A stretch of DNA of 50,515 bases from Vitrella brassicaformis CCMP3155 (taxonomy: Eukaryota > Protista > Chromerida). The position numbers and the translations under genes are program-made. How positions within the stretch are numbered: the first letter of the stretch is position 1; each line of letters starts with the position of its first letter. The stretch is taken from contig CDMY01000568.1 of the NCBI GenBank assembly GCA_001179505.1, forward strand, positions 1-50,515, given 5' to 3'. This document shows positions 2,895 through 33,600 of this stretch, piece by piece. The notes below the pieces were generated by a model that saw only the letters and a list, made by a program, of their open reading frames with translations, did no database searches and had not been told where the DNA came from.

Positions 2895-5800
2895 CCTCGA
2901 GAGCTTCACGTCGGCGTCTATGCGTTTGTCACTCCCGTGTGGTGTCTCAAGCCACCGCTGCCCTCCCCACTCAGTGGGGCCGTCCTCCAGCACCACACCG
3001 AGCTCGTCATCGACTCCAGCAACACACGACAACGGAGATTTTGGGGTTCCATGACCCCGCAGACGGCATACGAGCTGGGCAAACAGATGATCAACCTTAA
3101 GTGTCTCATCCACCGCTTCCCCCAGACACCTGATGGGGCAGAAGGGATTGCGGCTGGCCACCATTATGTCGCAAATGGATGGTGCCGTGGGCTCGTCATT
3201 GCACTGGTGGAGGGCCATGTGGCGGGACGGCAGGCAGCGCGCGAGAAGGAGAGGCCGGGGACAACGATGGCCGTGGGATCGCTCAGGTCACTGACCTTCA
3301 AAGCAGTGGTGCTTCCAGGCAGCGGACCGCGGGAGATCGCTCAACTGGCCGACATCAATTCTAACCCTCCTGCTGCCGCCCCATCGCAATCCATCAGCCT
3401 CCCAGCCCTCACAGATGTCAAAGGGGTCAGACGTGGCCACGTCGTGATCGAAGGGCGGGGATGGTCCATGCCGGCTGTCGAGCGGGTGATCGTACGGTAT
3501 CCGGGGGCCGAGCTCCCGGACATCAGGCCGTTCGTCGCCACGACGAGGTCCCTTATCGATCTGTTTGTGGTTCTAGTGCCGCCATCGCAGCTGGCCGAGC
3601 TGCTGGAACTCATCCCAGTGGGGCAGCAGGGTGGTCCGGGGCCTCTCGCGAGGTTTCAGAACATGAACTACATCAAACTCTACGAGATCGAATCGATCGC
3701 CATCTGCCGAGACGGCCTCTCGCGGCTTCAGGCAAGCGAATAAGAAGCAAGGGGCGTAGGACAGGAGAACCCGGAGAAGAGGAAATGGCATTCATGCCTT
3801 TGTTGTGCTCTGCATTCAGAAGTGTTTGGTGGATCGCGGCTGCTTGAAGTCTCTCCGCTTCCTGCGCATAGAGGTGCATCGCAGCGACTGCCATTGGCTC
3901 CTCCTTAACGACTACGCGACGTTCAAGGCCCTCGCCTCGCTCATCGACGCGACCTGCTCCCCGTTGAGCGAGGTCAAGTGTTATGTTTGCCCCTCTGGTG
4001 GAGAGATCCGAGACATCCCACTCACCCATTTGCTGGCGTACACCCGCTTCGGCAAACTGCCTGACTGTGGTCCCCAGCTCCTCAGTGCTTTGCTAACTTG
4101 CTATAACGTGAGGATGAAGCCTCAACGGAGGCCTCCCGGCTCTCCTTCTGTTGAGAGCTGCATTCAGGGGACACCACCTTCGGCATACCACTATGCCTGG
4201 ACCGTCACCCAAGACCAAGTGACCAGGCCATACAACGGGCCTATCGACAAGAGCTTGGTGGGCAACCTGTCGCTTGGAGCTTGTGGCGTTCCGAGTAGTA
4301 GCGGATTTAGCATGTCCATCGAATGCGAGCAGGGGTGGACCCCGCTGGCCGACGCCATTCCGCCCGAGCCTCCCGAGTTCAAAGCGTTCAAGGCCGACGG
4401 CCTTGTGCGAGTGAAAAGTCTGACCGTCAAGAGCCGCATCGGCTTGGGGGTGGCAAAGATGCTGCTGAGGAGAGGCCCGGAACTCGAGGATATGCAGCTG
4501 ATGGATATGGCTCCATCGGATGTACTGAGCCTCCTGAGGTGCGCCTTTGTGTGGAAGACGCCAGAGAAACTGGCACTCGAGCGGCTGCATCAAGAGGGTG
4601 GGTGGCAGACGGAGATTTCACTGGGTATCCAGCAGAGGTTCCAAAAGGTCAAGACGCTGTGCGTCAAGGGAGAGGTTGCTGCATGCTTTGCGGCAGCCAC
4701 AATGCCTCACATGTCAGCCATCCGTGAGTTCACCATATGCGCCAACGAGACAGAGGCGCGCCAGGCTCTCGTCAATGGAAGTGGTGCGACGATCCCCCGG
4801 CTGAGTCTGGGTGGGGCATCTGACGGCCGCCAGGACTTGATCAAGGCTGAGGACGAGAGGGATGGCCTCACACTGGGCGATTGGAAGGACGAACTGCCAC
4901 ACATCAACACCCTAGTCATGCACCTCGACGGTAATTGGCAAAGCTGTCGAGAAGAACAATGCGCCACTTGACGTACCTGTGTGCCGTATCTCGCTGGTCT
5001 CAGTGCCGTCTGCCGATGTGGTCGACCCAGGCGTTTTCATTCTGTCGAGCATCTGGTCGGTTCTCGAGATTGAGTCGATCTCCGTGCTGAGGCTCGTCCT
5101 GCCTCATCGATCCCATCTCGATGCCCTCAACAAAGCCATTGAGCGACGTTTCTCTGAGATAGAAGGGAATGTCTATTCAGTGGAGGAAATGCTCTGTCTC
5201 AAAATTGGCATCCCAGCGGTAATGGAAAGGCCGCAATGATGTTGGTGGTGGTGCTCATGTAGAAGGCACTATCTGCTTTCCTTTATTGTGTCTCCGTTGA
5301 TCAGTTGCGCAAGGCTGCCTTTGCACACTCAGTGCGTCCAAGACTAGCGCACCAGGGACTCGCTTCGATGTTTGAGCGCTACTTGCCTTCCCATCCGCTC
5401 TATGTATCAGCCGAGGCGCTCGCCATCGACTTTGCCGGCCGCGTGCGTGCCGCTCTACCAATGACTGTGATCGACCCCCCATATGCGCCTCAACGTCTGA
5501 AGGCGCCACTCATGGCGGCAATGGAGAGACACGGCCTGGCGATGGAGCCCATCATGCGGCTGCATGGTGATGGGCCGTGCCTCCCCAGCCCCTCTGTGAT
5601 CGCATCCGCCAGTCAGCTTATGGCCGTGCTGCAAAAGACGGGCAAGCAAATCGCAGACATCGAACCGCTCTATGAGTGAGACACTCAACAAATCCTCGTC
5701 CACCTGGGTTATGTTATACTCGTCTTGTTCTCCTCTCCTTTGTACTTCACCACAGGGCCTCTGTGCACGGGTTTGCGTATACGGACATGCACGATTGTGT

Positions 5801-18008: not shown

Positions 18009-21000
18009 CTAAGCAGCCGCCTGGCCACCGCCCCCTTGGGCCCCTGCCGGTTGCTGGCCCGAACCCGTCTCGTTATCGCTGTCGTCGTCTATGACTATCG
18101 CTCGTGATGCATCGTCGGCCGGCGGGGGAGCGGCGGGAGCAGCTGCCGGTGGCTGTGGCTGAGCCGCGGCAGCAGCTGCTGGCTGTGGTGCCTGTGGCTG
18201 GCTGGCCGCGTCTGCGTCTTCTGCTTCTAGGTCGATCAAAGGGATGGGGCCGCCGACAGCCGGGGCGCTGGGGGGTCCTTGATTCTGCGCTTGTGCAGCT
18301 GCACCACCACCAGTCGCCCTCGCGCCTCCCTGATGGTTTGCCGATCCATGCCCAGCCGCAGCAGCAGCTGCTCCCGCAGCTGGGCATTGGTCGTCTCCTG
18401 CTTGGAAGGAGTTGCGTGGTCGCATGTGTCCGGTGATGCGGCACTCGCTGTCGCCCTCCTGCGGAGCCCGGATGTAGCGAAGCGTGCCGTCGTAGGCGAT
18501 CACATTGCCGCTCACTGACACGCCCCCCACCAAGTCGATGGCGTCCAGATGGCCCAGCCGACGGTCGTGCGCATCGTTGGCACCTACACACAGGCATGCA
18601 TCACAGACAGACACAGGTACATGGCTGGCTGCCTCTGTCGTCCCTCCCGTCTTGTCCATGAATGGGTGTGTGGTCGCTCACCGAGGTCGCATGAGACCCT
18701 CAGGTCGATCGGGGCAGGCGGCTCCACAGACACCAAACCACCTCCCCGGCCACGTCCCCTTCCTCCCCCCCTGCCCCTGATTCGGGGGCCTCGAACCACC
18801 ACTGATGGCCCCTGCACGCGATATGGCGCCGGGGGGGTGGACGAGGGAGACTCCGGCTCTCCCTGGCCGTTCTGCTGCTGCTGCTGCTGCTGTTGCTGCT
18901 GCTGTGGCATCGGGGTTTGGGGTAGCGGCGGTGGGGCTGGCGCGTTCGGCGCATTGTTGTTGTCGGGCGTCGGAGGTGGCTGTGGAGGCGAGTAGGCCTC
19001 GTCTGTGACTGGGGGTGTGTGAGCTGGCGACTCCTGTCGCCCTTGCTGCCCGTCTGTGTCGACCTGCATCGGTGTTGCCGGCTCAGGTGCCCCTCCATCT
19101 GCACCTTGTCGTGGCTGCATCTCTGCGTCATTGCCACGGGGAGGGGAGTTGCCGTCACCTGACCACACACACCACACCACACCACACACCAAGCGTCACT
19201 CACATCATGACATGACGTTGGCTGTGATTCATGTGTGGGCGTGGCATGGCATTCACGTACCTACCGGGTGGATGTGGCGGCGGGCCAGGGCCCGCAGGAG
19301 GCCCGTGCGGCCCCAGATACCCCGGGTACCCATAGCCGTAGGGATAGCCATAGGGTGGCGGGTAGCCGTATGGTGGAGGGGCGTGCGGGTATCCGTATGG
19401 GCTGTTGCCGGGTGGTGGGGGCGGCATGTATGGAGGTGGGTGGGGGTAGAGGACATACGGTGGGGGAGGGTGGGGGAAGGGGTGGGGGTATGGTGGAGGC
19501 CAAGACGGGGGCATGGCCGCAGCGGCAGCAGCGGCAGCCGGCTCGTCACGCTTTCTCTCCTCCTCCTTCTCGACGTCGCTCATCTCGTCGCCCCCCTCCG
19601 TCTTGCGCCGCTTCTCCCTTTCCTCCCTCTCGTCGTCTTGCTTGGACGGCTGAGACCTCTTCGGTGGTCGGTCGTCAACGTCGACAAGCCCACCTGAGCT
19701 GGGGGGAAGAGACGGCAGCCCCGCTGCAGCAGCAGCCGCGGCTGCCGCGGCAGCTTCTGGTTCGGCAACCCCAGCTGCCGGGGCGAACGTGCGATCGTGG
19801 TGCTCGGTGCCGATGGTGCCGCGACAGTTCTCCTCGCCGCAATCTGATGATGATGGATGGACGAGATGAAGGGAGACACAAGTCATGTGTGTGTGTGGTT
19901 CTGATTGCGTGTGTTTGGTGCAGTGCATTGGGTGTGTGCTGTGCTGTGCTGTGCCCTTACAGCAGGGGATGTCCGAGTACGCCAGGCCATAATCTGATTA
20001 TCGCCATGCACGACGAACAAACACACCAAGCCATGTGATGGCGGAGAAGGCTCTCTCTCTCTGTGTGTGTGTGTGTGTGTGTGTGGCGGGTACCTACCGA
20101 TCGTGATAGGGTCTCCGTGTGCGACCTCACGGATGGTCTGGAGGACGAGCGGCGCGTGGCCCTCGGTGCCGCGCCACAGCACCGACACCTGGCAGTTGGG
20201 CCGGCACGAATGGTTGACGAAACGCGACACGTTGCCGAACCACTGCACACACACACACACACACAGCCACAGTGGCAAGGGACAGAAAGCAATCACGTGA
20301 GCGAGACGATGGACAATGGACAATGCACAATAGCTGGTCGTCTCCCTGACTAACCTCACCGTGGCATCGATGTGTGGGTGGTCATCGGGAGAGTCCTCCT
20401 CTCTCCCACGCCTCAGCGGGCATCCTTGCTGCTGCTGCTGTGCGTTGTCATCGTCGTTGCCACCGTTGGCATGGTCGATGTCGTCATCGTCGTCGTCTCT
20501 CTCCCAGTACTCCATGATGTAGTTGTGCACGTCGCCGTGGCGCTTGGCCACCTCAGACCGCACATTGTTCTCGATGAGATTGATGCGCTCGCCGGCGTAA
20601 CACATCACCACACCGTGGGGCGGGATGGGCGGCACCGACTGATGACACACACACACACACAGAGGGAGAGGAGGAGGGGGAGGTGTGCATGTGACAAGTG
20701 TGTGTGTGTGTCGGGATGTCTGTGTGTGTGTGTGTGTGTGTGTGGTTGGGTGCTTACGAGCGAGTAGCACTCGAAGCCTCGCTCGTCCGTCCACCGCACA
20801 CCCATGGGATACCGCACACCATCCCTTGGAAACGTCCTAATCCGCCCACACACAAAACACACACAAACCGCTCACACAGAGTGACCACCATACCCACACC
20901 CACAGAGCGACTCCCCGTCCTGACCGACCTGTTAGTGCAGGTGCTGGCCAGGCAGCCGCACCGCTCCCCGCAGCAGTCGCCAGGGAAGGCGTGCTCGTCA

Positions 21001-22413
21001 CCGTCATAGCTGCCGAGGCAGTACCGCACCCCGTCCTTCTCCACTGCCCAGCACCGCACCACCTCCTTGTGCTTGATGCAGCCCGCGATCAGACGCCACC
21101 CGTTGTGCACCCTCATGTGGAGGTCAGAGGCGTCGTTGGCCATCCACCCGTCCACCGACGCGTCGATGTCGCTGCTGGCGCGGTGGTTGGCGAAAGCTGC
21201 TGGGGTGGCGAGCAGGGGCGTCTTGCTGCTGTCGAAATCCCGTGGGCGGCCCTGAGAGAGAGACAGGGAGAGACAGACAGAGAGAGAGAGAGAGAGAGGG
21301 CACGTGTGTGTGCCTGTGTTTGGTAGCAGGGTCAGCTTGCCATGGTTTGGATGATGCGGTAGTACTGTGCGATGACTCTGTTGATGTCGCCGCCTGGCGT
21401 GACGCCTCGCGCGTTGGGCGGCGGGTCGTTCTGGTGGTAGGTGTCCCTGATGTACTTGATGCGCAGCTGCAGGAGCGTCCGGGCGGCGTCGCGACCCTCC
21501 TCGGGGGCACACCCGCTGCAGATGCCTCGCAAATGGTCTGATCCGAGGGCGACAGAGAGGAGATGGATGGATCGGCGTGTTGGTGTGGTTTGTGTGTGCT
21601 GCGCACCGTTGTCGGTCATGCTCCAGGCCACCATGTGTTTGACGTAGCAGAAGTTGTAGGGCGAGTGGCGCATCGACCCACCACTGCCAGCAGCACCAGC
21701 CCCCATGTCAACTGACAACAAGAGCACCGACCGACACAAACAAACATGCATTCAGGCGTCTGGCGGCCTTCTCCTGTCGTGTGTGAATGTGCGGACTGAC
21801 CAGGGACGGGGAACGGCTCTTTGCCGCCCGACAGGTCTTTGGACGGATCAAACTCCCCCGCACGGTAAGGCGGGTCCAGCACGATACTCAACGTCACCCT
21901 GCACCACACCACACACCACACACAAACCACGCCACTGACAATCCCGCCACGCCATCGCTCTCTCTGCTTGGCGTACGTCCTCGGCTGCATGTCGCCGTTG
22001 CTGCCACCATTGTCGTTTCTAGCAGCAGCCGCCGCCCGTGGTGAGCTCTTGTTGCGGCCGTTGCCCCGGCGTCCCCTGGGCGGCCTGCCGCGGCCACGAT
22101 GGGTGCCGCTGTGGGGAGAGAAGGGGTCCGTGTGACGCGAGGGGGCGACGAAACGGAAGAACGGCATCGACAGGAAGTTGCGGGGAATCGACAGCAGCTG
22201 AGGGAGGGAGAATGGGACAGAGCAAGTAGGTTGTTGATCAAGGGGGGATGGTACTGCCTGCCTGCTGGTGTAGCTGTGCACACCACACCCACCCACCCAC
22301 CCACCTCTGTGCTTCCCGCGTTGTCGATCCGCAGCTGAAATGGCAGGAACTCGGGCGTGCCCTCATCAGACGACCAGGCCACGTTCTCCGCCACACACAA
22401 CTAAACACATCCA

Positions 22414-22447
<34 letters not shown>

Positions 22448-24561
22448 TCCCCCCGCACCTTCACACACCCCTCGCCCCCATCCCCCGTCCGTCCACACCT
22501 TATCGAGGTTCTCCATCACGTCAGCGAACGTGTCGAGTGGGTCGACCTCCAGCGACAGCCTGCGCGCGTAGCTGCCGGACCATGACGACTCGGTCTCGTC
22601 AAACTCGCCTTGGCTGCGACTGCGACTGCCGCCGGGGCCGCCGCTGCTGTTTTGCCGCTCGAGTGTGAGGGTAAGTGCGCCGGGGAGGTCCAGCGGGATC
22701 TCTCGCGTCATCTTGTTGGGCGAAGGTGGGCCGGGGCCATTGGTGGGGACCCGGGCCTTGCGCAAGTGCTTCAAATACCTGACGGACAGACACAGAGAGG
22801 CGTCACGTCACACACACAGCACAGCCCAGCGGTCTCTCGTGAACATGGGTCGTGTGTTGTGGTGTGGTGTGTTGTGTTGCCTTATCGAATCGACAGGCAA
22901 GGCATACCATACCAGTCTGGAATGTTGCTCTCCTCTATGTAAGAGAGGAAGCTCTCGTCCGGCGGCTCGGCCTCCTCGTTCTCGGGGATGCGGTAGCCGC
23001 CGTTGCTGTAGGGCTCCGACGGCGGCTCGTCCGAGAAGCGCAGGACGAAGTGCCAACACACCTTGCCGTGGCGGCAAGAGTAGTCGCGCCAGGCGTGCTC
23101 CACGAAGTACAAGCCGTCATACCGAAACCCATACGACGAACGATACCTAACACACATCACAAACACACACACAGACATCGAATGCACCGCACCCCTCCGT
23201 GTGGTGTGTTGTGGTGTGGTGTGACTCACTTGGAGTGCAGCGAGTGCTTTCGTATGACGCGGACGGGCTCGTGCTGCTCGTACATGGTCTGCAGGCCCTG
23301 CTCGGCGTCGGCGACGCCGTTGTCGGAGGGGCCGGGGACACACAAGAAGCGGACGCCCCGGTCCACACAATCGTTGGACACAACGATGGCCACGGCATAC
23401 TTGCCTGAATGAACCACACACACGCAGGCAGGCAGACAGGCAAACAGAGAGGCAGGGAGGGTGTCCATGTGGGTGAGTGTGTTGAGAGGATGACGTATTC
23501 ACCTTCATCGCCCCCCAGATAGACGCCATCTCGGTGTATGGTCTCCCAGTAGACCCGCCCCGACGCCTCGTCGACCTCATCCAACACACCGCCAAGCATG
23601 CGAAACGCACTCAACTCACCTGCACAACCACAACATCCAACACACGACACATGGCGGACGCATATACTGTGTTGTGCGCCGCGCCGCGCCGCTTTCCATG
23701 TCTGTCTGTCTCTGTCTGTGTGTGGTGGTCGGGTCGGGTCGCCTACCGACCTACCGTCGCGCAGAAAGTGGAATCCCGGTGTGATGGACTTGAGTGTGGG
23801 CGTGCCGAGCATGTCGTCGGCCGTCTGCCACAGCTCATACCCCGCGTTGTGCATCACCAGGGCACAGTCCTCGTCAGAGTCACGCTTCAGGCTGCCGCTA
23901 CTCAACACCTTGACCGTCTCCAACCTTACAAACACACACACACACACACACGCCATTGCACTGCTCGTGTCGTGTGTGGTTCTTCTCCCTCTCCCCCTCT
24001 CCTCTCCTCTCCTCTGTTCTGCATGTCATGTGTGGTGTGAACTCACCAGACTCGTCCGACGACCTGCAGCAGGTGTCCCGGCTTGCCCTGCCTCCCCGCC
24101 AGCCGCCGCACCTGGCGGAACACCGCCAGTGAGCAGGAGTGGGGCAGATCCTTGATACGCTGACGGGCCTCCCGCTCCTTCCTCTCAGCACGCGATGATG
24201 CCGCCGCCACGTCGCCACGCTGGGCACGAAACGACGCCAGCTGCCGGGCAGTCGGCCCTCCACGGGCCGTACCGCGACTGTCACTCCAAGGTGTTGGTGC
24301 TCTTGGGTTGGAGCTGGCTGACGCCCTCCCTCTTGTCCGGCCTCTCGGCGCTCGGTGCTCCCTGCTTCCGCTGGTGCTGCACTGGGAGGGGGCATCGGAT
24401 GAGGAATTGCTCCTCTGCTGGTCGGGTGGATCCATGTTCATGGAGCCAGACGGCAGATGCGGGGGATTGTGACCCTCCTGGGAACCCATGGCGCCTGTCT
24501 GCGGCTGGAGAATGGGGGATTTGGGTCGCTCCACTTTTTTTTTGAGCTCGCAGACGATCAT
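18009..24561 (-). CDS. SRA(YDG)-preSET-SET-postSET histone methyltransferase-like protein (SUVH-like, paralog E); start could be 24561 or 24490
   Basis: SRA motif GFRYDGLYFV (~23120); preSET start DLSGGKEPFPVP; CGCLASTCTNR; SET motifs IDAT..FGNVSRFVNHSCRPN and ITI|DYG; postSET IPC|YCGEENCRG; Pro/Gln/Ala-rich tail. Confidence 0.85.
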
Positions 24562-24790
24562 AGTGCTCCCTGAAACCGCTGCTGCACAGCGATAGTGGAG
24601 GCGATGTTGCCACAAGGAGGTCCGCACGGCCACGGCCTCGGAGCAGGAGCGAACGGCGGATCTTTCTGCCCGCCGTCCTCCCTTTGATCCACACGACCCT
24701 CACAGCTGCGGGGAGGTGTGACCAACCAAGCACTCATCGGCGGAGCGGCAGTGACTATGCTAGGGCGTCCCTCGTGTTGATAGGACGGCC
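24562..24790. promoter_or_regulatory. Putative ~230 bp bidirectional promoter between the two SRA-SET genes
   Basis: Inferred from divergent ATGs at 24561(-) and 24791(+). No motif was identified. Confidence 0.5.
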
Positions 24791-26034
24791 ATGGCGCTAG
24801 CCATGGCGGAAAGTTTGGACTGGGATGACGACCACGATGCCCATGACTACGATGACGCCAACCAGCCGGCAGCGGCACGTCAAGAGCACGTCCCATCGCC
24901 CTCCGGCTTCAACGGCACCGATGACGCTAGCGATCCCACCCCCTCCCTTGCGGATCAAGGCGACTCACCATCCTCTTTCCTCGGTGGCGGTGCCGCGCGC
25001 TACGGGGTCAGGCAGCGGCGGACAGCGAGGGGGGACAAGATGCTCGCTGCACCGTCTGAGCTCAGCAGCCAGATCGGTGCCAACGATCGGCCGAGGAGGA
25101 ACCCGTGCCGGTCGGGCGAGTTGCCGGCCGTTCCTGCTCCTGAAGTGTGTGACCTGATCACGTACAAGAATAGCTTCGGCCCTGACGGCGACAATGGCAC
25201 CACTGCGCTAGAGATCGTCAATCTGGGCCTCGTGACGCTCATGAACCAGCGCGCAAGCTTGGAGCAGTCGGTTTTGGCGCTCGAGAGGGGCGGACTCGTG
25301 CCGCCTGGGTTGGGCACCTACCCGTGTATCAGGCCTGGCGCTATGTTCTGGAACCGCCACCATCTGCGGCTCTGCGGCGTGCACAAGGACGTAACACACC
25401 CCATCGCAGTGGAGAAAGGTACGTGCAAGGCAAGCACACCGAGAGAGGAAGGTGGGGTGTGTCTTCATCTCGCCGGGCCGGGTCCATGTATTTGTGTGTG
25501 TGTGTGTGTTGTGTGTGTGTGTGTGGTGGCGTGGCCCACCTCAGGGAAGAAGACCACCGTGTGTGTGTCTGTGGTGTTGGAGGGCGACAACGTGACGGAC
25601 GACCGGGGCGACCGGTTCGTGTACGCCCTCCGACTTCCCCAAGTGAAGAAAGCTAACAAAGAGACAAGGCAACGGCTGTTGGTACGTTGATTGATCCATC
25701 CATCCATCCATCCAGGACAGCGCACTCCCTGTCTGTCTGTGTCGTGTAGTCCGTTCAGTCTACTGCGAGGCTGGCCCTCACGGCCGCATTGGACACAGAA
25801 CATCCGGTGGAAGTCTCCCGCAGCGCCATCGCAGAGTCGCCCTTCCGTCCACTGTGGGGCTGCAGATATGACGGTAGGGATGGGTGGATGGATGGCAGTC
25901 AGCGCGTCAGTATGTGTGTGTGTGTGTGTGTGTGGCTGATGGATTCAGGGCGTCACCTGGTGAAGGATGGATGGAGGGAGGAGACAGAAAGGGGGCATGT
26001 GTGGAAGTACGTGACGCTGAAACACACACAAACA

Positions 26035-26066
<32 letters not shown>

Positions 26067-27581
26067 CTCTCTGGATCGCATCGTTTGCCCTTCCCCCTTG
26101 TTCGTTCGTCGGCTCTTTCGTTCAGGTTCATCTTCAAGTCCGAGTCCCTCTTTGAGCCCACCGATCAGTCCCAACCGACGCCTTTCTACATGCCCCCCCG
26201 CCACGAAGCTCGCCGCTCCCGTGAGGTCTCGACAGACATCACCGTCGGGTCTGTGACCTTTCCCAGCCCCTTCAATCACTCGGACGAAATGAGGAAGTCT
26301 GCGACTAAGAAGGACCGCGCCGAGACGGCCGGCAGAGGGTGTGAGGTGGCTGTGGAGAGAGGTGCGTGGGGTGAGACCACCAGCAGCGTCTGGGTGCGGG
26401 ATATGGACACTTGCGAGGATGTGGAGCGGATGGTGGGTGGAAGACACACGAGCAAGGGCGGGAGGGAGGGAAGTGGCTGTGCTCGTTGCGTCCGTCATGT
26501 GTGGTGTGATTGATGTCTGGTGTTAACAGTTGATCCCTCGTGGTTTGCCGGTAGGGAGGGACAAGAACAGCCCCTTCTTCGACTTCCAGCTCAAAATCGC
26601 CACCGACACCGACACCCAAGTAGGTCACTCACTGACATCACACAAGTGACTGAGTGAGGGAAGTGATTGACACCGCCCGACGGACGGACGCTGTGCTGTG
26701 TGTGCGTATCCATCAACCCAACCAAACCAGGTCATCCCCCTGGCCAGAGCTGCTCTCAAGGACAAGCCCATCCAGCACATATTCCGCTCACGACCCGGCA
26801 AGCGCACATCCATCCTACTCCAGCCACCGTCAGTCACCACATGCACCCTCACACACACACACACACACACGCACGCACACAGTGAATGAATGACGTGTGT
26901 CTGTCTGTCTGTCTGTCGTCCTTCACGGCTGCAGGCCCGCCAACTTGTTCCACCTCCATAAGCCCATGGGCGAGCCCATTTGCGCCGACCTCGCTCTCGG
27001 CCGCGACAAGCACAAGATCGCTGTGTACAACTACGTTGATGACACTGGGCGGGACGCCAATGTCATCACCTTCTGCTACACCCGCGGGCAGATCGACACC
27101 GGCTTCCCCTACTCCCACCTCGTCAACTACGACGCCCCCTGCAGCGGCTGCGCCCCCCCATACGTCCGTGCCATCGCCGAGCGGCTGCTGGAGCAACAGG
27201 GCAGGCGCAATGAGATCAAGACCCTGGGCGCTTCCCGCGACAAGGTGCTCGGGCTGGCCGATGAGGCTGGGCAAGAGGGGAACGGGCCGAGTGGGCTTGA
27301 CGGCGAGTGGCAGCTGCTGGAGCCAGGAGGTCGGGCGGGAGTGGACGCGCCCAGGAAGTGCTTGGCCATCCAGAACAAGAAGACACGGCTCATCTACTGC
27401 CTGGGGTACACGCCGCCGGTGGACACCACAGACGTGGACAGCCGGAGTCACCACATGGGCAGCTGCAGTGACCACAATTGCCAATGCAGCCGCGAGTGTG
27501 AAAACAGGTGCGTGTGTCAGGGAGGGGCCGGACTATGGGTCGATGCACCAATGGGGCTGTGGATGACACAAACAAACACGC

Positions 27582-27618
<37 letters not shown>

Positions 27619-30600
27619 TGTGTCTTAGGGTGCGAATCGACGGCATCAGGTTTCCTCTCGCTATCCACAAGACAGAGCAGAAAGGCTGGGAGCTGCGGGC
27701 GGATGCGAGGATCCCAAAGGGCAAGCCGATCTGCGAGTACGGACACACAATACAACACAACACAAAACAGAGAGCCACGCGGCCAGACAGGTGTGACACA
27801 TGCGCGCTGTCTGTCTGTCTGTCTGTCTGTGGGTGTCTGGCTGACACTCAGGTACGCTGGTGTGCGCAAGACCCAGACCGAAGGCAACATCATGGCGGCT
27901 CGGGCGGATGACGACGAGACCAACTACATCTACAGCGTGTTCGACGAGCCCCATGACGACACAGACGTAAAAAAGAACACTTCGGGCACCACGGACGACG
28001 ACAGTCTAGAAGAGGAGAACCTCGACCCGTGCGTCGACTCCAGCATTGTCGGCAATGTTAGTCGCTTCATGGTACGTGATACACACCTGGGTCAGACGGT
28101 CAGGCGGCGCCGTGCCCTTACACACAAAGGGGAGGAGGGGGGCAGGGCAGGGCAGGGACTGACAGGCAGCTTAACCGACTGACTGTTTTGTCTCTCTGCG
28201 TGGGTTGGTTGGTGCAGAGCCACAGCTGTGTCCCTAACTGCCGGGTCGTCGCTAACTTCCCAAACGGCACTTGCTCGAGAGCCACGTGAGTGACGAATGA
28301 CTGAATGGACACACACACGTGCCGATCGATACCTATCACGAGTGGTGGTTGTGTTGTACTCGATATATCGATCACTCAGCGCGTGCGGGGCCTTCTTTCC
28401 GCAGCTGGTGGTCTTCCCCGTTCGTGACATCGAGCCTGGCCAGCCGATCACCATCGACTACACTGAGCGTACGTGAGATAGATAAAGAACCGACAGACAG
28501 ACAGACAGACACCCACACCACTCCCTCACGTCCCTCTCACTGTCTGTCCGTCTGTCTGCCCGTGTGTGTGTGTGTGCGCAGACTACGCGTACATCAAGTG
28601 CCACTGTGGGGAAGAGCTCTGCCGTGGGTACATCGGCGCGAAGCCGAACGACCACACCGACTCACCACAACGACGCCGACGGCAGGAGAAGCCAAGGCCG
28701 CACAATGACGATGACATGGCCCTGGCTCCCCTCCCCCATGCCGCTGCTGCAGCGGCAGCACAGCCGCCCCACTTCGAGCCAAATCCCTCTCCGACTCGGG
28801 AGGTGTCCGAGAGAATGGAGGAGACGGCCGGCAAGGCCACAAAGGACCCGGGCTGGTGGGCTGATGAGGTTAGCGACCCTGGGAGCAGCTCTGGGGAGAG
28901 CCAGGAGGACGGCGAGGGGAAAGATGCGGCAGAGCCGGCACCACCGCCACCACCACGACAGCAGCAGCAGCAGACCGAGCGTGCAGGGAAGGTGGCCGAC
29001 GACATGCAGCAAGAATCGGTCAGTGAGGCAGAAAGGCAGTCAGGCAAGACACTTAGGGCGTCAACCTGTGTCAAGTCAACCTGTGTTGGCTGTTTTCAGG
29101 CCTCACTCCTGCCTCCTGCTGCACCAGCAGCTGCTGCTGCACCTGCATCTGCATCCCTCGATGGCCCTGCTGGGGCTCTCCCGGCAGCAGCAGGAGAGCA
29201 GCTGCCGGCGGCGGTGGGAGATCAGCCGATGGAGGCCGACGGACAGGCCGAGAGGCAGGCCTCAGCAGATGGTGCACTGCCACAGGTATGACCAAGTCAG
29301 CCCAACCCGACAGAAACAACATTGTCACGTCTCTGTCTGATTTGTGCAGGTTTCTGCTGCTGCTGCTGCTGCTGTGTTGCCGACTTGTATGGAGCCATCT
29401 GCGCCCCCTTCGCCGCTCGGCAAGCGCAAGAGGGCCGCCGACGACGACGGCGAGGGAGAGGGAGAAGGGGATGATGCCGACGACGCCCACGCCCAGGTAC
29501 ACATGGACAGACCATGTTCTCACCACACAGCACATGTGCGACAAGCACACACATGCACGTACACGTTCGTCTTCATTCCTTGTCAGGCTGTGGCAGCACC
29601 AGCCGCTGCTGGGAGTGTGGGTGTTGCTGGTGGTGCCTCCATCAGCAGCGCGGCGCCATCAGTGCCCTCTGGGGGTGGGGACAGTCGCAGTTCATCGGTG
29701 CCCCAGCTGATGAGGATACGCAAGGTGGGGAGGAAGCGGCAGAAGACGGCTCAAGACGCCACCCAAGAGGCACCACAAGAGGCCCCCCAGGAGGCACCTG
29801 CTGATGGGGCTGCGGCTTTGGCAACTCAGCCAGCACACCACCCTGTGCTGCCGTGTGCGTCGGCTGCTGGCGGTCCACCTGCCATCGCGGTGACCAGCGA
29901 GGCAGCCGTCGAGCCAGCGGCTGAGGCGACTGCGAGTGCGAGTGCGCCTCCTGCCGAGTCGCAGCCGTCTGAGGCTGTCCCCAGGGAGGCGGACGCGGTC
30001 TTGCAACCGACTGCGGCCCCTGATGATGCCTTAGTCCGGTGGCACACGACTGGTGAGCGCCTGTCGGTCCCTCTCCCACTGCCCGCCTCGCCGCCACACA
30101 GCCGTGCCTCTCGTCGAGGAGGAGTCCGTCGACCCCCACCTACATCACCACTACCACCACCACGACTGCCGCGAGTAGGTGACCCTGTCGGTGTGCCACC
30201 TCACGACACGGCCGGCGGACTGTTCGTCGATGGCCCTCGCCGGGCCTTGATGAGCGATGTGCCCCCTCCCTCACTCTCACCACCATTCCCACCCCGGGAG
30301 GTGATGCCGCTGCTCCCTTTGCTGCCGCCCACGGCCAGGCCTATGTGCATGGAGCCTCGCCCTCGCCCGAATCATCATCCGGCCCCTCGTCCGCAATTCT
30401 ATCGCATCCATCCATCCCCGTGGATGAGCGACAGGTCCATGGCGCTCCCCCCTCTGGAGGCCGGCTTCAGCGCTGAGGAGGGACACCGAGAGAGGCGGAG
30501 CAGCCAGGGCCCCAGGTCAGCTGCAGAGCCTGCTGGTGGTGCTGGTAGCGCTGGTGGTGCCGAGGACCGCATGAGTGGGGACCGGTCGTCAATGGCCGTT

Positions 30601-33600
30601 GCCCACGGTTTCCGCTACAGGGAGGGCATCAAATTGAAAATGGGTCAGATTGGCCGCGCAAGGTTGATGGAGCTGGTGCGCAATTACCGCGGCACCCACA
30701 AGGCCGACACGGACGACATCTTGCGGCAGAATGGCCTTCACCAGCTGGAGCTTCGCAGCGCATCCATTAAGCAGCTGCTCAAGTGCGCACATCTATTCGG
30801 GCTGTGGGATGCGGCGGTGCAGATCCACATCGAATATCAGCAGCAGCAGCAGCAGCAGCGCAGACGGGAGGTGGAGGTGGTCAGGGCAGCTGAGGAGGAC
30901 CGTCTTCTCCGGCTGTCCTCCCAACTGCCCACCTTGCCCACACAGCAGCAGCACCCACGCCCCCTCCAGGACGACGACAACACTGACGGCTCTTCGGCAC
31001 CGCGTCGGAGGGGGCGGAGCCGATTCGACTCGCGCTTCCATCGACCCGGTCCTTCGCCGCAATCGATGTCAGATCAGCTTCGCACCGAAGACATGGATGC
31101 GGAGGAGGGGCTGTGGATGCTTAGGGGGTGGCCCCACCAACCCTACACCACCAACTCGTCTGCTGCGGCCCCAACCAGCGGGGAGGCACGCGTCGAGAAG
31201 TGTGCCGACCAGCTGCAGGACCAGCGCGGCAACGGCAGTGGTGACGCCAGCCACAACACCGACTCACAGGCGGGCGCACTGGTGGTCGACGGCTCGGGAG
31301 GTCAAATCGAAGCCGCACCTGCAGCAGACGGCTCGACCGAGCCAATGCAACAAGATGGCGACACCAGCGAGCACTTCGACACACGTGCATCGGTGCCGGC
31401 CGCTGCTGCTGCTGGTGGTGGAGGTGGTGGGCTGATATTGGGGCTGAAGAGGGCTGATAGGGATGAGGAGGATCGCAGCGTGGCGCCGCGGGCACGGGAG
31501 GGTGTGGGTGGGGCCGGTGGCATGATCCGCTCGGACGGATCGGGATCGCCCATGGAGCTCTGTCGGGGTGCCGAGTCTGATGGTGAGGGGGGGAGGGAGC
31601 GTCCACTGAAGCGGCAGAAGTCCATCAAGGACGAGGGTGGGGAGCACCTGCAGGTGAGTGAGGTGCACACACAACAGTACTGACTGCACTGCACAATGAT
31701 GGCTGGCGCAGATCAGATGGTCACTCACTCCTTGCTTGGTATTCTGTCATTAATTACTCAGGAGCACGCGGTGCACGTTGCACCAGCAGAGGAGCAGCCA
31801 AGCCAGCCTGCCACGGACATGGTCGACAACGCCATGACGTCTGAGCCACCTGCACACCCGGCAGGTGCTGCGGCTCCCCCTGCCGAGCTCTCCACCAGCA
31901 GCCGAATGGAGCCACCACCGGCCGTGGTCGGCGAAGCTGAGGCGCCGGCTTTCGTCACGGAGGCCGACGCAGCAGCACTGCCGCCACCGGCAGAACCAGA
32001 CCAGCATGACGACTTGAGCAACGGCGAGCTGCTCCCGCCTGTGGATGGCCATGGCGATGGGGAGATGGATGTGGATGTGCCCCCACAGGTCGAGTACTAC
32101 TTAAAATTTGCCCACTTGGATCCTCTGGAGTTATGGGACGGGGTGTCTGTGTCGCCTGCTGCTCTCCGCCGACAGGTCCATGCACACATGGCGGATGATG
32201 CTGTAGCTGCTCCGCCAGCGGCTGCAGCTGAGGGCGACGGTCATTTCTCCCTACCCTCTAGACCATCCCCACCACCCCCACCACCCCCCTTGGAGCCACT
32301 CATGGCTCAAGATGCCACTCAAGACGCCATCCAGGAGGCACCTGCTGATGGTGCTGCGGCTTCGGCAAGTCAACCAGCACACCACCCTGTGCTGCCGTGT
32401 GCGTCGGCTGCTGGCGGTCCACCTGCCATGGCGGTGACCAGCGAGGCAGCCGTCGAGCCAGCAGCTGGGGCGACTGCAAGTGCGGGTGCAGACGCGGATC
32501 GCGCCATTGACCTGGATGCGGCTCAGACCGCGGTCTCGTTCGCTGCGCCACGACCATCTGCGCCAGCTGCACCAGCTGCTGCTGCGGCTGCTGCTGCTGC
32601 TGCTGCCCCAGCCTTGCGGTTGGGTGTGAGTCCCAAGCCAAAGCCGCTCATCAGTCCCGGCAGCGATGCCGAGATGGCGCAGCCCCACCAGCAGCAGGGC
32701 CTCCTGGCCGTCCCGTACTCGCCGCAGGCGCACCCACTTGTGCCAGCTGGCGGGCAGCAGGGAGCAGGTTTTGGTGGAGGTGGTATCGGCGGGGCTGGGC
32801 AGGGCGAGCGTGACGTTAGCATGAGCCCGCGAGGCGGCCGTGGTCGCCGTGAGAACGGTGAGGTGTTGATGGCGGACCGCGTTGATGGGCGAGCGTTGGT
32901 GTTAGCGGACAAGACCCCCGTCGCCATGTGAGCAGGGAGGCTGGGTGGGTGGGTGGAGGGGCAAAAGGGACGCGATGCCTCCATCTATCCATCGATACGA
33001 TTGTGTTTGTCTGTGCACTGCAGGCCGGGGCTCGGTGCGGCCCCTGCAGCAGCTGCAGCCATCGTACCCAAGCACCCATCGCACCAGCAGAAGCAGCGTG
33101 GCGAGCCAGCCAACGGCGGGCACTCCGGCGGGCCCCCCCGCGGCGGCGGGCGTGTCAGCCCTCACATCAAGAAGAAGCAGGATCGCCAGCAGCAGCAGCA
33201 GCAGCAGCAACAATTGCGTGAGGAGTTCGGTGACGGGCCCATCTGCATTGACTTGCTGGACGAGTCGGACGAAGACGCATCCCCGCCGGCCGCAGCGGCA
33301 GCTTCACCACCAGCAGCAGCAGCAGCACGGGGTGCAGAGGTGATGGACCTGAGCCATGACGACGACGACCCGCCGGATGCACCACCACCACCACCGCCAC
33401 CACAGCCACCAGCACGACCGATCGTCGCGGAAGATGAGGACGATGACTGTGCGATCACTGGAGTGGCGGCGGCTCCTGACTGTGAGATCACTGGAGTGGC
33501 GACGGCTCCGGGAGCTGCAGCCGCCGCCGCCCAGCAGCCCATGTCGATGCCCCTCCGGAGCAGGGAAGAAATGGCAGAGAGGGCGAAGGAGCTCAAGGAC

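What the first reader, a model, noticed from the sequence alone, without database searches (positions are those of the whole stretch)
20755..28225. Both SRA-SET paralogs have altered SAM-binding motifs
Seen: the SET GxG motif reads RGFECYS in E (about 20770) and KGWELRA in F (27681-27701), a Gly-to-Glu change in both. F also has RFMSHSC (Ser at 28218-28220) in place of RF.NHSC, while E keeps NHSC. Both keep the DY tyrosine and the postSET cysteines. Established: GxG and NH contact SAM, and Arabidopsis SUVH2/SUVH9 are catalytically inactive SRA-SET adaptors. Inference: an active/pseudo-enzyme pair, or two non-catalytic adaptors.
Basis: partly seen in the sequence, partly recalled or inferred. 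Interest (0 to 1): 0.7.

Follow-up and report, generated by a model that had tools for sequence, protein, structure and literature searches.

The report
Two algal SRA-SET genes, one impaired
Two neighbouring histone-methyltransferase-like genes of the alga Vitrella do carry the reported motif changes, but the shared Gly-to-Glu change is normal for this whole parasite/alga lineage (including an active malaria enzyme), so only one gene (F, with Asn-to-Ser in the cofactor site) looks like a weakened or dead enzyme.

Summary
E reads RGFECYS (20781-20761, minus strand) and F reads KGWELRA (27681-27701). F reads RFM|SHSC, with Ser at 28218-28220. E keeps RFVNHSC. Both keep the motif IV tyrosine (ITIDY) and the post-SET CxCx4C.

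The genome is Vitrella brassicaformis. The Glu that replaces the second Gly of GxG is not special to E and F:
- Glu also occurs in a third Vitrella SRA-SET paralog and in the SET/SUV39 proteins of Toxoplasma, Neospora, Besnoitia, Eimeria and Cyclospora.
- Plasmodium, including P. falciparum, has Asp there. Babesia and plant SUVH4 have Ala.
- The recombinant PfSET3 SET domain is reported to methylate H3K9.

So Gly-to-Glu does not indicate inactivity, and E is probably active.

F's Asn-to-Ser is a different matter:
- All 123 SET proteins that I fetched and that show this motif have Asn there.
- The same exchange (N4848S) inactivates MLL3.
- The AdoMet-non-binding plant proteins SUVH2/9 naturally read SHS at this site.

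F is therefore a plausible weak or pseudo-enzyme. It keeps every other catalytic feature, and no transcript of it was seen. This is a new member of a known kind, of moderate interest. Other notes of this scan report further SRA-SET genes in this genome, one with a dead SET domain.

The parts
20758..20836 (-). Gene E, N-SET exon with motif I RGFECYS (20781-20761). Glu at 20772-20770 replaces the second Gly of GxG.
   Evidence: Sequence and splice sites. Family alignment puts GFE in the column of GWE/GWD/GWG.
20360..20638 (-). Gene E exon with motif II (CYAGE), the NY tyrosine and a long acidic SET-I insertion.
   Evidence: Pfam SET hit on the ORF 19886-20794; alignments.
20098..20242 (-). Gene E exon with the intact motif III GNVSRFVNHSCRPN and the start of motif IV (DPITI).
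19961..19993 (-). Gene E inferred 33-nt mini-exon (D)YGLAYSDIPC. It supplies the catalytic Tyr and the first post-SET Cys.
   Evidence: AG/GT flanks. It matches the family pattern YG..Y...C.CG...C.G.IG. No RNA confirmation.
19200..19843 (-). Gene E last exon: (Y)CGEENCRGTIG post-SET, then a low-complexity tail up to the stop of the ORF. The 3' end was not determined.
22954..23838 (-). Gene E SRA exons. They include the junction 23838-23753 | 23617-23550 and the GFRYDGLY motif (23145-22954).
   Evidence: Weak Pfam SAD_SRA hits. A spliced contig in the RNA-like run X8 removes a GT-AG intron in frame. Alignment.
24791..25875 (+). Gene F 5' part: start codon at 24791 and SRA exons (PGAMFWNRHHLRLCGVH...; HPVEVSRS...WGCRYDG at 25753-25875).
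   Evidence: Exon borders were not all resolved.
26897..27507 (+). Gene F pre-SET exon, ending ...CQCSRECEN(R), with a strong donor CAG|GTGCGT at 27508.
27629..27736 (+). Gene F N-SET exon with motif I KGWELRA (27681-27701). Glu at 27690-27692.
   Evidence: aligned to GWG of SETMAR, SUVH6 and G9a, and to GWA of SUVH4.
27852..28071 (+). Gene F exon with motif II (EYAGV), an acidic SET-I insertion and GNVSRFM.
28218..28285 (+). Gene F exon starting with SHSCVPNC. Ser at 28218-28220 replaces the Asn of NHxC. The exon ends at 28285 (GT donor) or at 28280 (GC donor).
   Evidence: DNA contigs are identical here.
28380..28468 (+). Gene F motif IV exon ...LVVFPVRDIEPGQPITIDYTE (catalytic Tyr). It starts at 28380 with the GT donor, or at 28405 with the GC donor.
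28582..29291 (+). Gene F post-SET exon (H)YAYIKCHCGEELCRGYIG plus a tail up to the ORF stop. The 3' end was not determined.

Best explanation
E and F are two old, head-to-head paralogs of the chromerid/apicomplexan SUV39 (SET3) family. Their architecture is SRA, pre-SET, SET, post-SET. In this family the second glycine of the cofactor motif GxG is normally acidic (Glu or Asp) or Ala, so the Glu in E and F is inherited and compatible with catalysis. E has every other catalytic motif and is most likely a working H3K9 methyltransferase. F additionally has Ser in place of the Asn of NHSC. That Asn hydrogen-bonds S-adenosylmethionine. F is therefore most likely a weakened or inactive enzyme that still folds as a complete SET domain, and it may act as a chromatin-binding or regulatory partner.

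Shown here: the motif states, their homology, and their distribution across the clade. Inferred: activity of E, impairment of F, and any partnership between them.
For: Identity and context:
- The genome is Vitrella brassicaformis. P0007 carries that name, and its contig length of 470538 equals that of C356.
- Both genes have SRA and SET signals.

Glu is typical of the clade:
- Vitrella C356 reads KGWELAA.
- Toxoplasma, Neospora, Besnoitia, Eimeria and Cyclospora read AGWELRT.
- Seven Plasmodium species, including P. falciparum, read GWDIV.
- Babesia reads GWAL.
- All of these have an intact NHSC.
- PfSET3 is reported to methylate H3K9 in vitro (PMC8095176).
- Active SUVH4 has GWA.
- Exon by exon, E and F score higher against this clade than against plant SUVH or animal Su(var)3-9.

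E and F keep the YxG motif, the NY Tyr, the motif IV Tyr and the post-SET CxCx4C.

F's Ser is unusual and has precedents for loss of function:
- All 123 fetched SET proteins that show the motif have Asn there.
- MLL3 N4848S is inactive because an AdoMet hydrogen bond is lost (PMC4379744).
- Set1 N1016A is null (PMC3585878).
- SUVH2/9 read SHS at the same place and show no detectable AdoMet crosslinking (PMC2582956).

Gene integrity:
- A spliced contig indicates that E is transcribed.
- F's exons join in frame with canonical GT-AG sites.
Against: No enzyme assay exists for E, F or any Glu-bearing member of the clade. The only activity report is for the Asp-bearing PfSET3 domain, from a paper in which all nine tested PfSET domains were called active.

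F keeps every other catalytic and zinc-binding residue. That pattern is not what long-standing loss of catalysis usually leaves: the C508 paralog has lost several motifs. Ser can still hydrogen-bond, so F may retain activity.

No F transcript was seen, so F could be silent. E's motif I is more divergent than the family's (GFECYS) and has no independent PDB match. SUVH9, which reads SHS, may still need its catalytic Tyr in vivo (PMC8168562).

I did not build joined proteins, so there is no structure model of either pocket and no tree.
Confidence: 0.55

Rival explanations
1. Both E and F are active H3K9 methyltransferases. The Ser in F is tolerated, for example through a water-mediated contact to AdoMet or compensation elsewhere. 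The two paralogs differ in targeting or product state, not in being alive or dead.
For: F keeps RF, H, C and PN of motif III, YxG, the motif IV Tyr and the complete post-SET. Its exons stay in frame. SUVH9, which reads SHS, appears to need its catalytic Tyr in vivo (PMC8168562). Both genes have Ile at the Phe/Tyr-switch position (ITIDY), which hints at a shared and maintained active-site design.
Against: The identical exchange abolishes MLL3 activity, and loss of this Asn nulls Set1. All 123 fetched SET proteins that show the motif have Asn here.
Confidence: 0.27
2. Both proteins are non-catalytic SRA-SET adaptors of the SUVH2/SUVH9 type.
For: Both deviate from GxG. Set1 G951A, which changes a motif I glycine, loses di- and trimethylation. 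The genome holds at least one clearly degenerate SRA-SET paralog (C508).
Against: The same acidic residue is fixed across apicomplexan SET3 proteins, and PfSET3 is reported active. E has no other defect. Both keep the post-SET domain that SUVH2/9 lack. The SRA domains of both lack the GGYxDD stretch present in the canonical paralogs, so a role in reading methyl-DNA is itself doubtful.
Confidence: 0.06
3. F is a silent or decaying gene copy, and the Ser is simply an early disabling mutation.
For: No transcript contig of F was found in the two RNA-like runs, while E gave a spliced contig. F's SRA looks degenerate: HPVEVSRS for PVRVxRG, and no clear LY after RYDG. Another note of this scan reports a frame-broken SRA-SET locus in this genome.
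Against: All modelled SET exons are open, and strong canonical splice sites keep the frame. Zinc-binding and catalytic residues are retained. The RNA runs are small contig sets, and a gap in them proves nothing.
Confidence: 0.12

Closest known systems
Apicomplexan SET3 / 'SET/SUV39' histone H3K9 methyltransferases (PfSET3, the Toxoplasma gondii SET/SUV39 protein, Babesia SET3)
   Same: They share the SRA (YDG), pre-SET, SET and post-SET order. Motif I has Glu, Asp or Ala in place of the second Gly. The motif IV region ends in xY followed by G..Y...C.CG...C.G.IG. The SRA lacks the GGYxDD stretch. E and F exons score best against this clade.
   Different: E and F carry a long acidic insertion in SET-I, and read YAG rather than YVG and ITIDY rather than LTYAY. 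F has Ser for the Asn of NHSC, which none of these proteins shows. Vitrella has at least five SRA-SET genes, where the searches returned a single SET3-type protein per apicomplexan species (not counted exhaustively).
Arabidopsis SUVH2/SUVH9 (SRA-SET proteins without detectable AdoMet binding)
   Same: They have an SRA-SET architecture, and Ser replaces the Asn of motif III: CYxSHSxxPN in SUVH2/9 against RFMSHSCVPN in F.
   Different: SUVH2/9 also lost RF and the Cys of motif III and lack the post-SET domain. F keeps all of these, and E keeps the Asn as well. No link to RNA-directed DNA methylation is known or implied in Vitrella.
Arabidopsis SUVH4/KYP and SUVH6 (active SRA-SET H3K9 methyltransferases)
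   Same: The domain order is the same. They are among the top PDB matches of F's N-SET exon (second and third after SETMAR). SUVH4 shows that the second Gly of GxG can be replaced (by Ala) in an active enzyme.
   Different: The plant enzymes have Gly or Ala, not an acidic residue, and a canonical NHSC. Their SRA domains bind methylated DNA (established knowledge).
Human MLL3 N4848S cancer variant
   Same: It is the same Asn-to-Ser exchange in the NHxC motif. The Asn hydrogen-bonds AdoMet, and the variant is inactive in vitro.
   Different: It belongs to a different SET subfamily (H3K4, dependent on the WRAD complex) and is a somatic mutation, not a fixed natural state.

Membership tests
SUV39-type SET methyltransferases (pre-SET/SET/post-SET) | Motif I GxG | tested here: not met
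   E reads GFE and F reads GWE. The same deviation is found in the accepted SUV39 orthologs of Apicomplexa, so it does not exclude membership.
SUV39-type SET methyltransferases (pre-SET/SET/post-SET) | Motif II YxG | tested here: met
   E reads CYAGE and F reads EYAGV.
SUV39-type SET methyltransferases (pre-SET/SET/post-SET) | Motif III RFxNHxCxPN | tested here: inconclusive
   Met in E (RFVNHSCRPN). Not met in F (RFMSHSCVPN, Asn to Ser).
SUV39-type SET methyltransferases (pre-SET/SET/post-SET) | Motif IV with the catalytic Tyr (ELxFDY) | tested here: met
   Both read ITIDY. In E the DY lies in an inferred mini-exon.
SUV39-type SET methyltransferases (pre-SET/SET/post-SET) | Post-SET CxCx4C | tested here: met
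   E reads C-Y-C-GEEN-C and F reads C-H-C-GEEL-C.
SUV39-type SET methyltransferases (pre-SET/SET/post-SET) | Cys-rich pre-SET (Zn3Cys9) | tested here: inconclusive
   The C-terminal pre-SET part is present (F: SCSDHNCQCSRECENR; E: CCGERCGCLASTCTNR). The Pfam Pre-SET model did not reach significance on single exons. I did not count all nine Cys.
SUV39-type SET methyltransferases (pre-SET/SET/post-SET) | AdoMet binding and H3K9 methyl transfer | not testable with these tools
   This needs recombinant protein assays.
Chromerid/apicomplexan SET3 (SRA-SET) clade | N-terminal SRA/YDG domain followed by pre-SET, SET and post-SET | tested here: met
   Weak Pfam SAD_SRA hits on exons of both genes; GFRYDGLY in E and WGCRYDG in F.
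Chromerid/apicomplexan SET3 (SRA-SET) clade | Acidic residue or Ala at the second Gly of motif I | tested here: met
Chromerid/apicomplexan SET3 (SRA-SET) clade | Closer to this clade than to plant or animal SUV39 proteins | tested here: inconclusive
   Summed exon-wise BLOSUM62 scores favour Vitrella C356 and the apicomplexan proteins. No tree was built, because joined proteins were not made.
SUVH2/SUVH9-type non-catalytic adaptors | Motif III replaced by CYxSHSxxPN | tested here: inconclusive
   F shares only the Asn-to-Ser change and keeps RF and Cys. E has a canonical motif III.
SUVH2/SUVH9-type non-catalytic adaptors | Loss of the post-SET domain | tested here: not met
   Both keep CxCx4C; SUVH2/9 lack it.
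SUVH2/SUVH9-type non-catalytic adaptors | SRA that binds methylated DNA | not testable with these tools
   At the sequence level, the GGYxDD stretch present in the canonical paralogs C356 and C897 is missing in E (SNDCVD) and F (EGDNVTDD). Binding itself needs an assay.

The most novel reading that the evidence does not exclude
F is a naturally fixed Asn-to-Ser pseudo-methyltransferase that arose independently of plant SUVH2/9 (convergence on SHS). It would work with its head-to-head neighbour E as a regulatory or targeting partner. In addition, the conserved acidic residue in motif I would mark a lineage-specific cofactor pocket shared by chromerids and apicomplexan parasites.
Probability: 0.25. 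Interest if true: 0.55.

Novelty: new member of a known kind. Interest (0 to 1): 0.35.

Why it matters
This result corrects a tempting misreading. A 'broken' GxG motif is the normal state of the SUV39/SET3 heterochromatin enzymes in malaria parasites, Toxoplasma and their algal relatives, so it cannot be used to call them dead.

It also singles out one Vitrella paralog (F) that has the same Asn-to-Ser exchange that inactivates MLL3 and that characterises plant SUVH2/9. Together with the other Vitrella SRA-SET genes, which run from canonical (C897) to clearly dead (C508), F offers a small natural series for studying how SET enzymes turn into readers or adaptors. The conserved acidic motif I residue is a testable feature of the parasite H3K9 methyltransferase cofactor site.

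Tried and rejected
1. Exhaustive profile search with the E and F SET exons. It gave only 28 hits at E <= 0.001 and did not return the annotated Vitrella proteins for E or F. It did lead me to the GWE-bearing relatives.
2. Word-index searches. They found no Chromera or dinoflagellate orthologs of E or F, so whether F's Ser is conserved in other species remains unknown. P. falciparum was missed and recovered through cluster members.
3. RNA support. The two RNA-like runs are small contig sets. They gave one spliced contig for E's SRA region and nothing usable for F; most of the 'joints' were repeat artefacts at CA/TG and GACA tracts. The single read-laying run could not also cover E's SET exons.
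4. I first thought that F needed a non-canonical GC donor after the SHSC exon. Enumerating splice sites showed a canonical GT(28286)-AG alternative (exon from 28380) that also keeps the frame, so a frameshifted SET domain is rejected.
5. E's motif I exon and F's SHSC exon are too short for significant PDB matches on their own.
6. I did not build or submit a joined spliced protein. Exons were searched by reference only. As a result, there is no AlphaFold model of the E or F pocket, no fold search, no full-length family scan and no phylogenetic tree.
7. I did not predict the structure of P0007, because the tool returns no coordinates from which to judge where the Glu side chain points.


Full report
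**What is there**

The window is GC-rich eukaryotic DNA with many short exons and with introns full of CA/TG repeats. The assembly has 72.7 Mb in 1064 contigs. The organism is therefore this chromerid alga, a photosynthetic relative of the Apicomplexa.

Gene E lies on the minus strand at about 19.2-23.9 kb. Gene F lies on the plus strand from 24791 to about 29.3 kb. The two genes are head to head. Exon translations of both give Pfam SAD_SRA and SET hits; the hits are weak because each exon is short.

**Check of the observation**

Every stated motif is present at the stated place.
- F: KGWELRA is 27681-27701. GNVSRFM ends an exon at 28071. The next exon begins at 28218, after the acceptor AG at 28216-17, with SHSC. 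So Ser is at 28218-28220.
- E: RGFECYS is 20781-20761, with the Glu codon at 20772-20770. RFVNHSC is 20224-20204.
- A PDB sequence search places F's Glu on the second Gly of GWG in SETMAR, SUVH6 and G9a, and on the Ala of the active enzyme SUVH4 (KGWAVRS).
- E's motif I exon finds nothing in the PDB alone. In the family alignment, GVRYPMGVRWTDERGFECYSL falls in the same columns as GIQYRVAVRKTTDKGWELAAQ of the C356 paralog.
- Both genes keep YxG (CYAGE in E, EYAGV in F), the NY tyrosine, the motif IV tyrosine (ITIDY) and the post-SET CxCx4C.
- In E, DY and the first post-SET Cys lie in a 33-nt mini-exon (19993-19961). I inferred it from its AG/GT flanks and its fit to the family pattern.
- Genomic contigs of two DNA runs show no difference across 27846-29343.

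**Gene models**

- F's pre-SET exon ends at a strong donor, CAG|GTGCGT at 27508. Spliced, it gives ...CSRECENR|VRIDGIRFPLAIHKTEQKGWELRA.
- After the SHSC exon, two in-frame joins to the motif IV exon are possible. One is GT at 28286 with the next exon starting at 28380. The other is GC at 28281 with the next exon starting at 28405. Both keep LVVFPVRDIEPGQPITIDY. The canonical GT-AG pair is the more likely.
- One 154-nt contig of an RNA-like run joins 23838-23753 to 23617-23550. It removes a GT-AG intron in frame within E's SRA region. This is evidence that E is transcribed and spliced.
- No comparable contig covers F. The runs are small, so this absence proves nothing.
- I did not build or submit joined proteins. 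All searches used single exons by reference.

**The Gly-to-Glu change belongs to the clade**

Relatives found with the SET exons and with P0007 show the following states at the second Gly of motif I:

| Protein or group | Motif I |
|---|---|
| Vitrella C356 | KGWELAA |
| Toxoplasma, Neospora, Besnoitia, Eimeria (2 species), Cyclospora | AGWELRT |
| Plasmodium knowlesi, coatneyi, vivax, fragile, vinckei (2 subspecies), falciparum (P0127, P0128) | [IV]GWDIV |
| Babesia (3 species) | MGWALH |

- All of these have an intact RFLNHSC or RFINHSC, and those not truncated at the C-terminus also show the post-SET cysteines.
- They are the proteins annotated as SET/SUV39, or SET3.
- Among the fetched proteins, Glu at this position occurs only in Vitrella and coccidia, and Asp occurs only in Plasmodium.
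- A JBC paper reports that the recombinant PfSET3 SET domain methylates nucleosomal H3K9 and not H3K64 (PMC8095176).
- So an acidic residue at this position is compatible with H3K9 methyltransferase activity.
- Within Vitrella, another paralog (C897) has the canonical KLGWGLVAQ, and C441 has GWSVRT.
- Exon by exon, E and F score higher against C356 and the apicomplexan proteins than against plant SUVH or insect Su(var)3-9.

**The Asn-to-Ser change in F is unusual and has precedents**

- All 123 fetched SET proteins with a recognisable xHxCxPN motif have Asn there. The sample is biased towards the SUV39, SETD2 and NSD families.
- In MLL3, the cancer variant N4848S hits the Asn of NHxC. The paper locates this Asn in the AdoMet pocket, where it makes a hydrogen bond to the cofactor, and the variant is inactive in vitro (PMC4379744).
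- Yeast Set1 N1016A is a null allele (PMC3585878).
- Arabidopsis SUVH2/9 have CYxSHSxxPN in place of RFxNHxCxPN, lack the post-SET domain, and give no detectable AdoMet crosslink (PMC2582956).
- F (RFMSHSCVPN) thus shares exactly the Asn-to-Ser change with SUVH2/9. Unlike them, it keeps RF, the Cys and the post-SET domain.
- A later paper argues that SUVH9's catalytic tyrosine is needed in embryos (PMC8168562). An SHS motif is therefore not proof of inactivity.

**Interpretation**

- E has no catalytic defect beyond the clade-typical Glu. Its motif I also has a conservative Trp-to-Phe change and an unusual Cys-Tyr following the Glu. I regard E as a probable active H3K9 methyltransferase.
- F is a probable hypomorph or pseudo-enzyme because of the Ser.
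- F's otherwise complete active site argues in two directions. Either the change is recent, or the fold and perhaps residual activity are still under selection.
- By contrast, the C508 paralog has lost several motifs at once: GKWELIA, LEVAGE, RFVRHSEQTN and LTSCFG.
- E and F are not recent duplicates. Their exon-level similarity to each other is about the same as to C356, and their intron positions in the SET region all differ. They do share an acidic SET-I insertion, YAG and ITIDY.

**Side observation on the SRA domains**

C356 and C897 have the stretch NGGYDDD...Y[YA][VA]GEGG. E has SNDCVDRGVRFLCVPG, and F has EGDNVTDDRGDRFVYA. These resemble the apicomplexan SET3 proteins, for example LLNDSRFEDKG. 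From my own knowledge of the UHRF1 and SUVH5 structures, the Tyr and Asp of GGYxD line the 5-methylcytosine pocket. Methyl-DNA reading by E and F is therefore doubtful. This weakens the analogy with SUVH2/9 adaptors. The genome does contain C5 DNA methyltransferase-like sequences.

**Verdict**

The shared Gly-to-Glu change is inherited and not informative about activity. The Asn-to-Ser in F is the only real candidate lesion. This is a new member of a known kind (apicomplexan-type SUV39/SET3 genes), with a possible pseudo-enzyme paralog. Interest is moderate to low until F's expression, AdoMet binding and activity are measured.

Other notes of this scan report further SRA-SET genes in this genome, including one with a dead SET domain. 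That agrees with what I saw at C508.

Noticed in passing
L004:1320-1933 (G000:C508 about 17.3-17.9 kb, minus strand); SRA at L004:2950-3420: A further Vitrella SRA-SET paralog has a clearly degenerate SET domain. Motif I reads GKWELIA, motif II LEVAGE (Tyr lost), motif III RFVRHSEQTN (Asn to Arg, Cys to Glu) and motif IV LTSCFG. It is a much stronger pseudo-enzyme candidate than F.
   Followed up: partly
L002 about 2950-3021 and 2277-2872 (G000:C897, minus strand): Another SRA-SET paralog has the canonical motif I KLGWGLVAQ, together with RYANHSCEPN, LTYDY and C.CGSSKC, and a canonical SRA (NGGY|DDWDRG...YAGEG). The genome therefore holds GWG, GWE, GFE and degenerate versions side by side.
   Followed up: partly
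window 23229-23468 (-) and 25562-25687 (+): The SRA domains of E (IVVSNDCVDRGVRFLCVPG) and F (VVLEGDNVTDDRGDRFVYA) lack the GGYxDD stretch found in the canonical paralogs. They resemble the apicomplexan SET3 SRA domains in this, so 5-methylcytosine binding is doubtful.
   Followed up: partly
window 20098-19961 and 28450-28461: E and F both read ITIDY in motif IV, so Ile occupies the Phe/Tyr-switch position two residues before the catalytic Tyr. Relatives have Tyr or Phe there (LTYAY, LTFSY, LKYHY). The effect on product state (mono-, di- or trimethylation) is unknown.
   Followed up: no
window 20360-20638 (-) and 27852-28071 (+): Both genes carry a long, strongly acidic insertion in the SET-I region (E: DDDDDDIDHANGGNDDDNAQQQQQ...; F: DEPHDDTDVKKNTSGTTDDDSLEEENLD). 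The apicomplexan orthologs lack it.
   Followed up: no
G000:C929:163784-165060 and C954:156253-156405: There are C5 DNA methyltransferase (PF00145) matches in the Vitrella genome. This bears on whether the canonical SRA paralogs could read 5mC.
   Followed up: no
window 29344-31683 (+): A 779-aa open frame rich in Ala, Pro and Gln lies directly downstream of F's post-SET exon. I did not determine whether it is F's tail or a separate gene.
   Followed up: no
L003 about 2130-2853 (G000:C441, minus strand): This is a pre-SET/SET gene in which no SRA was found, with motif I GWSVRT (Ser at the second Gly) and RFINHSCRPN.
   Followed up: no
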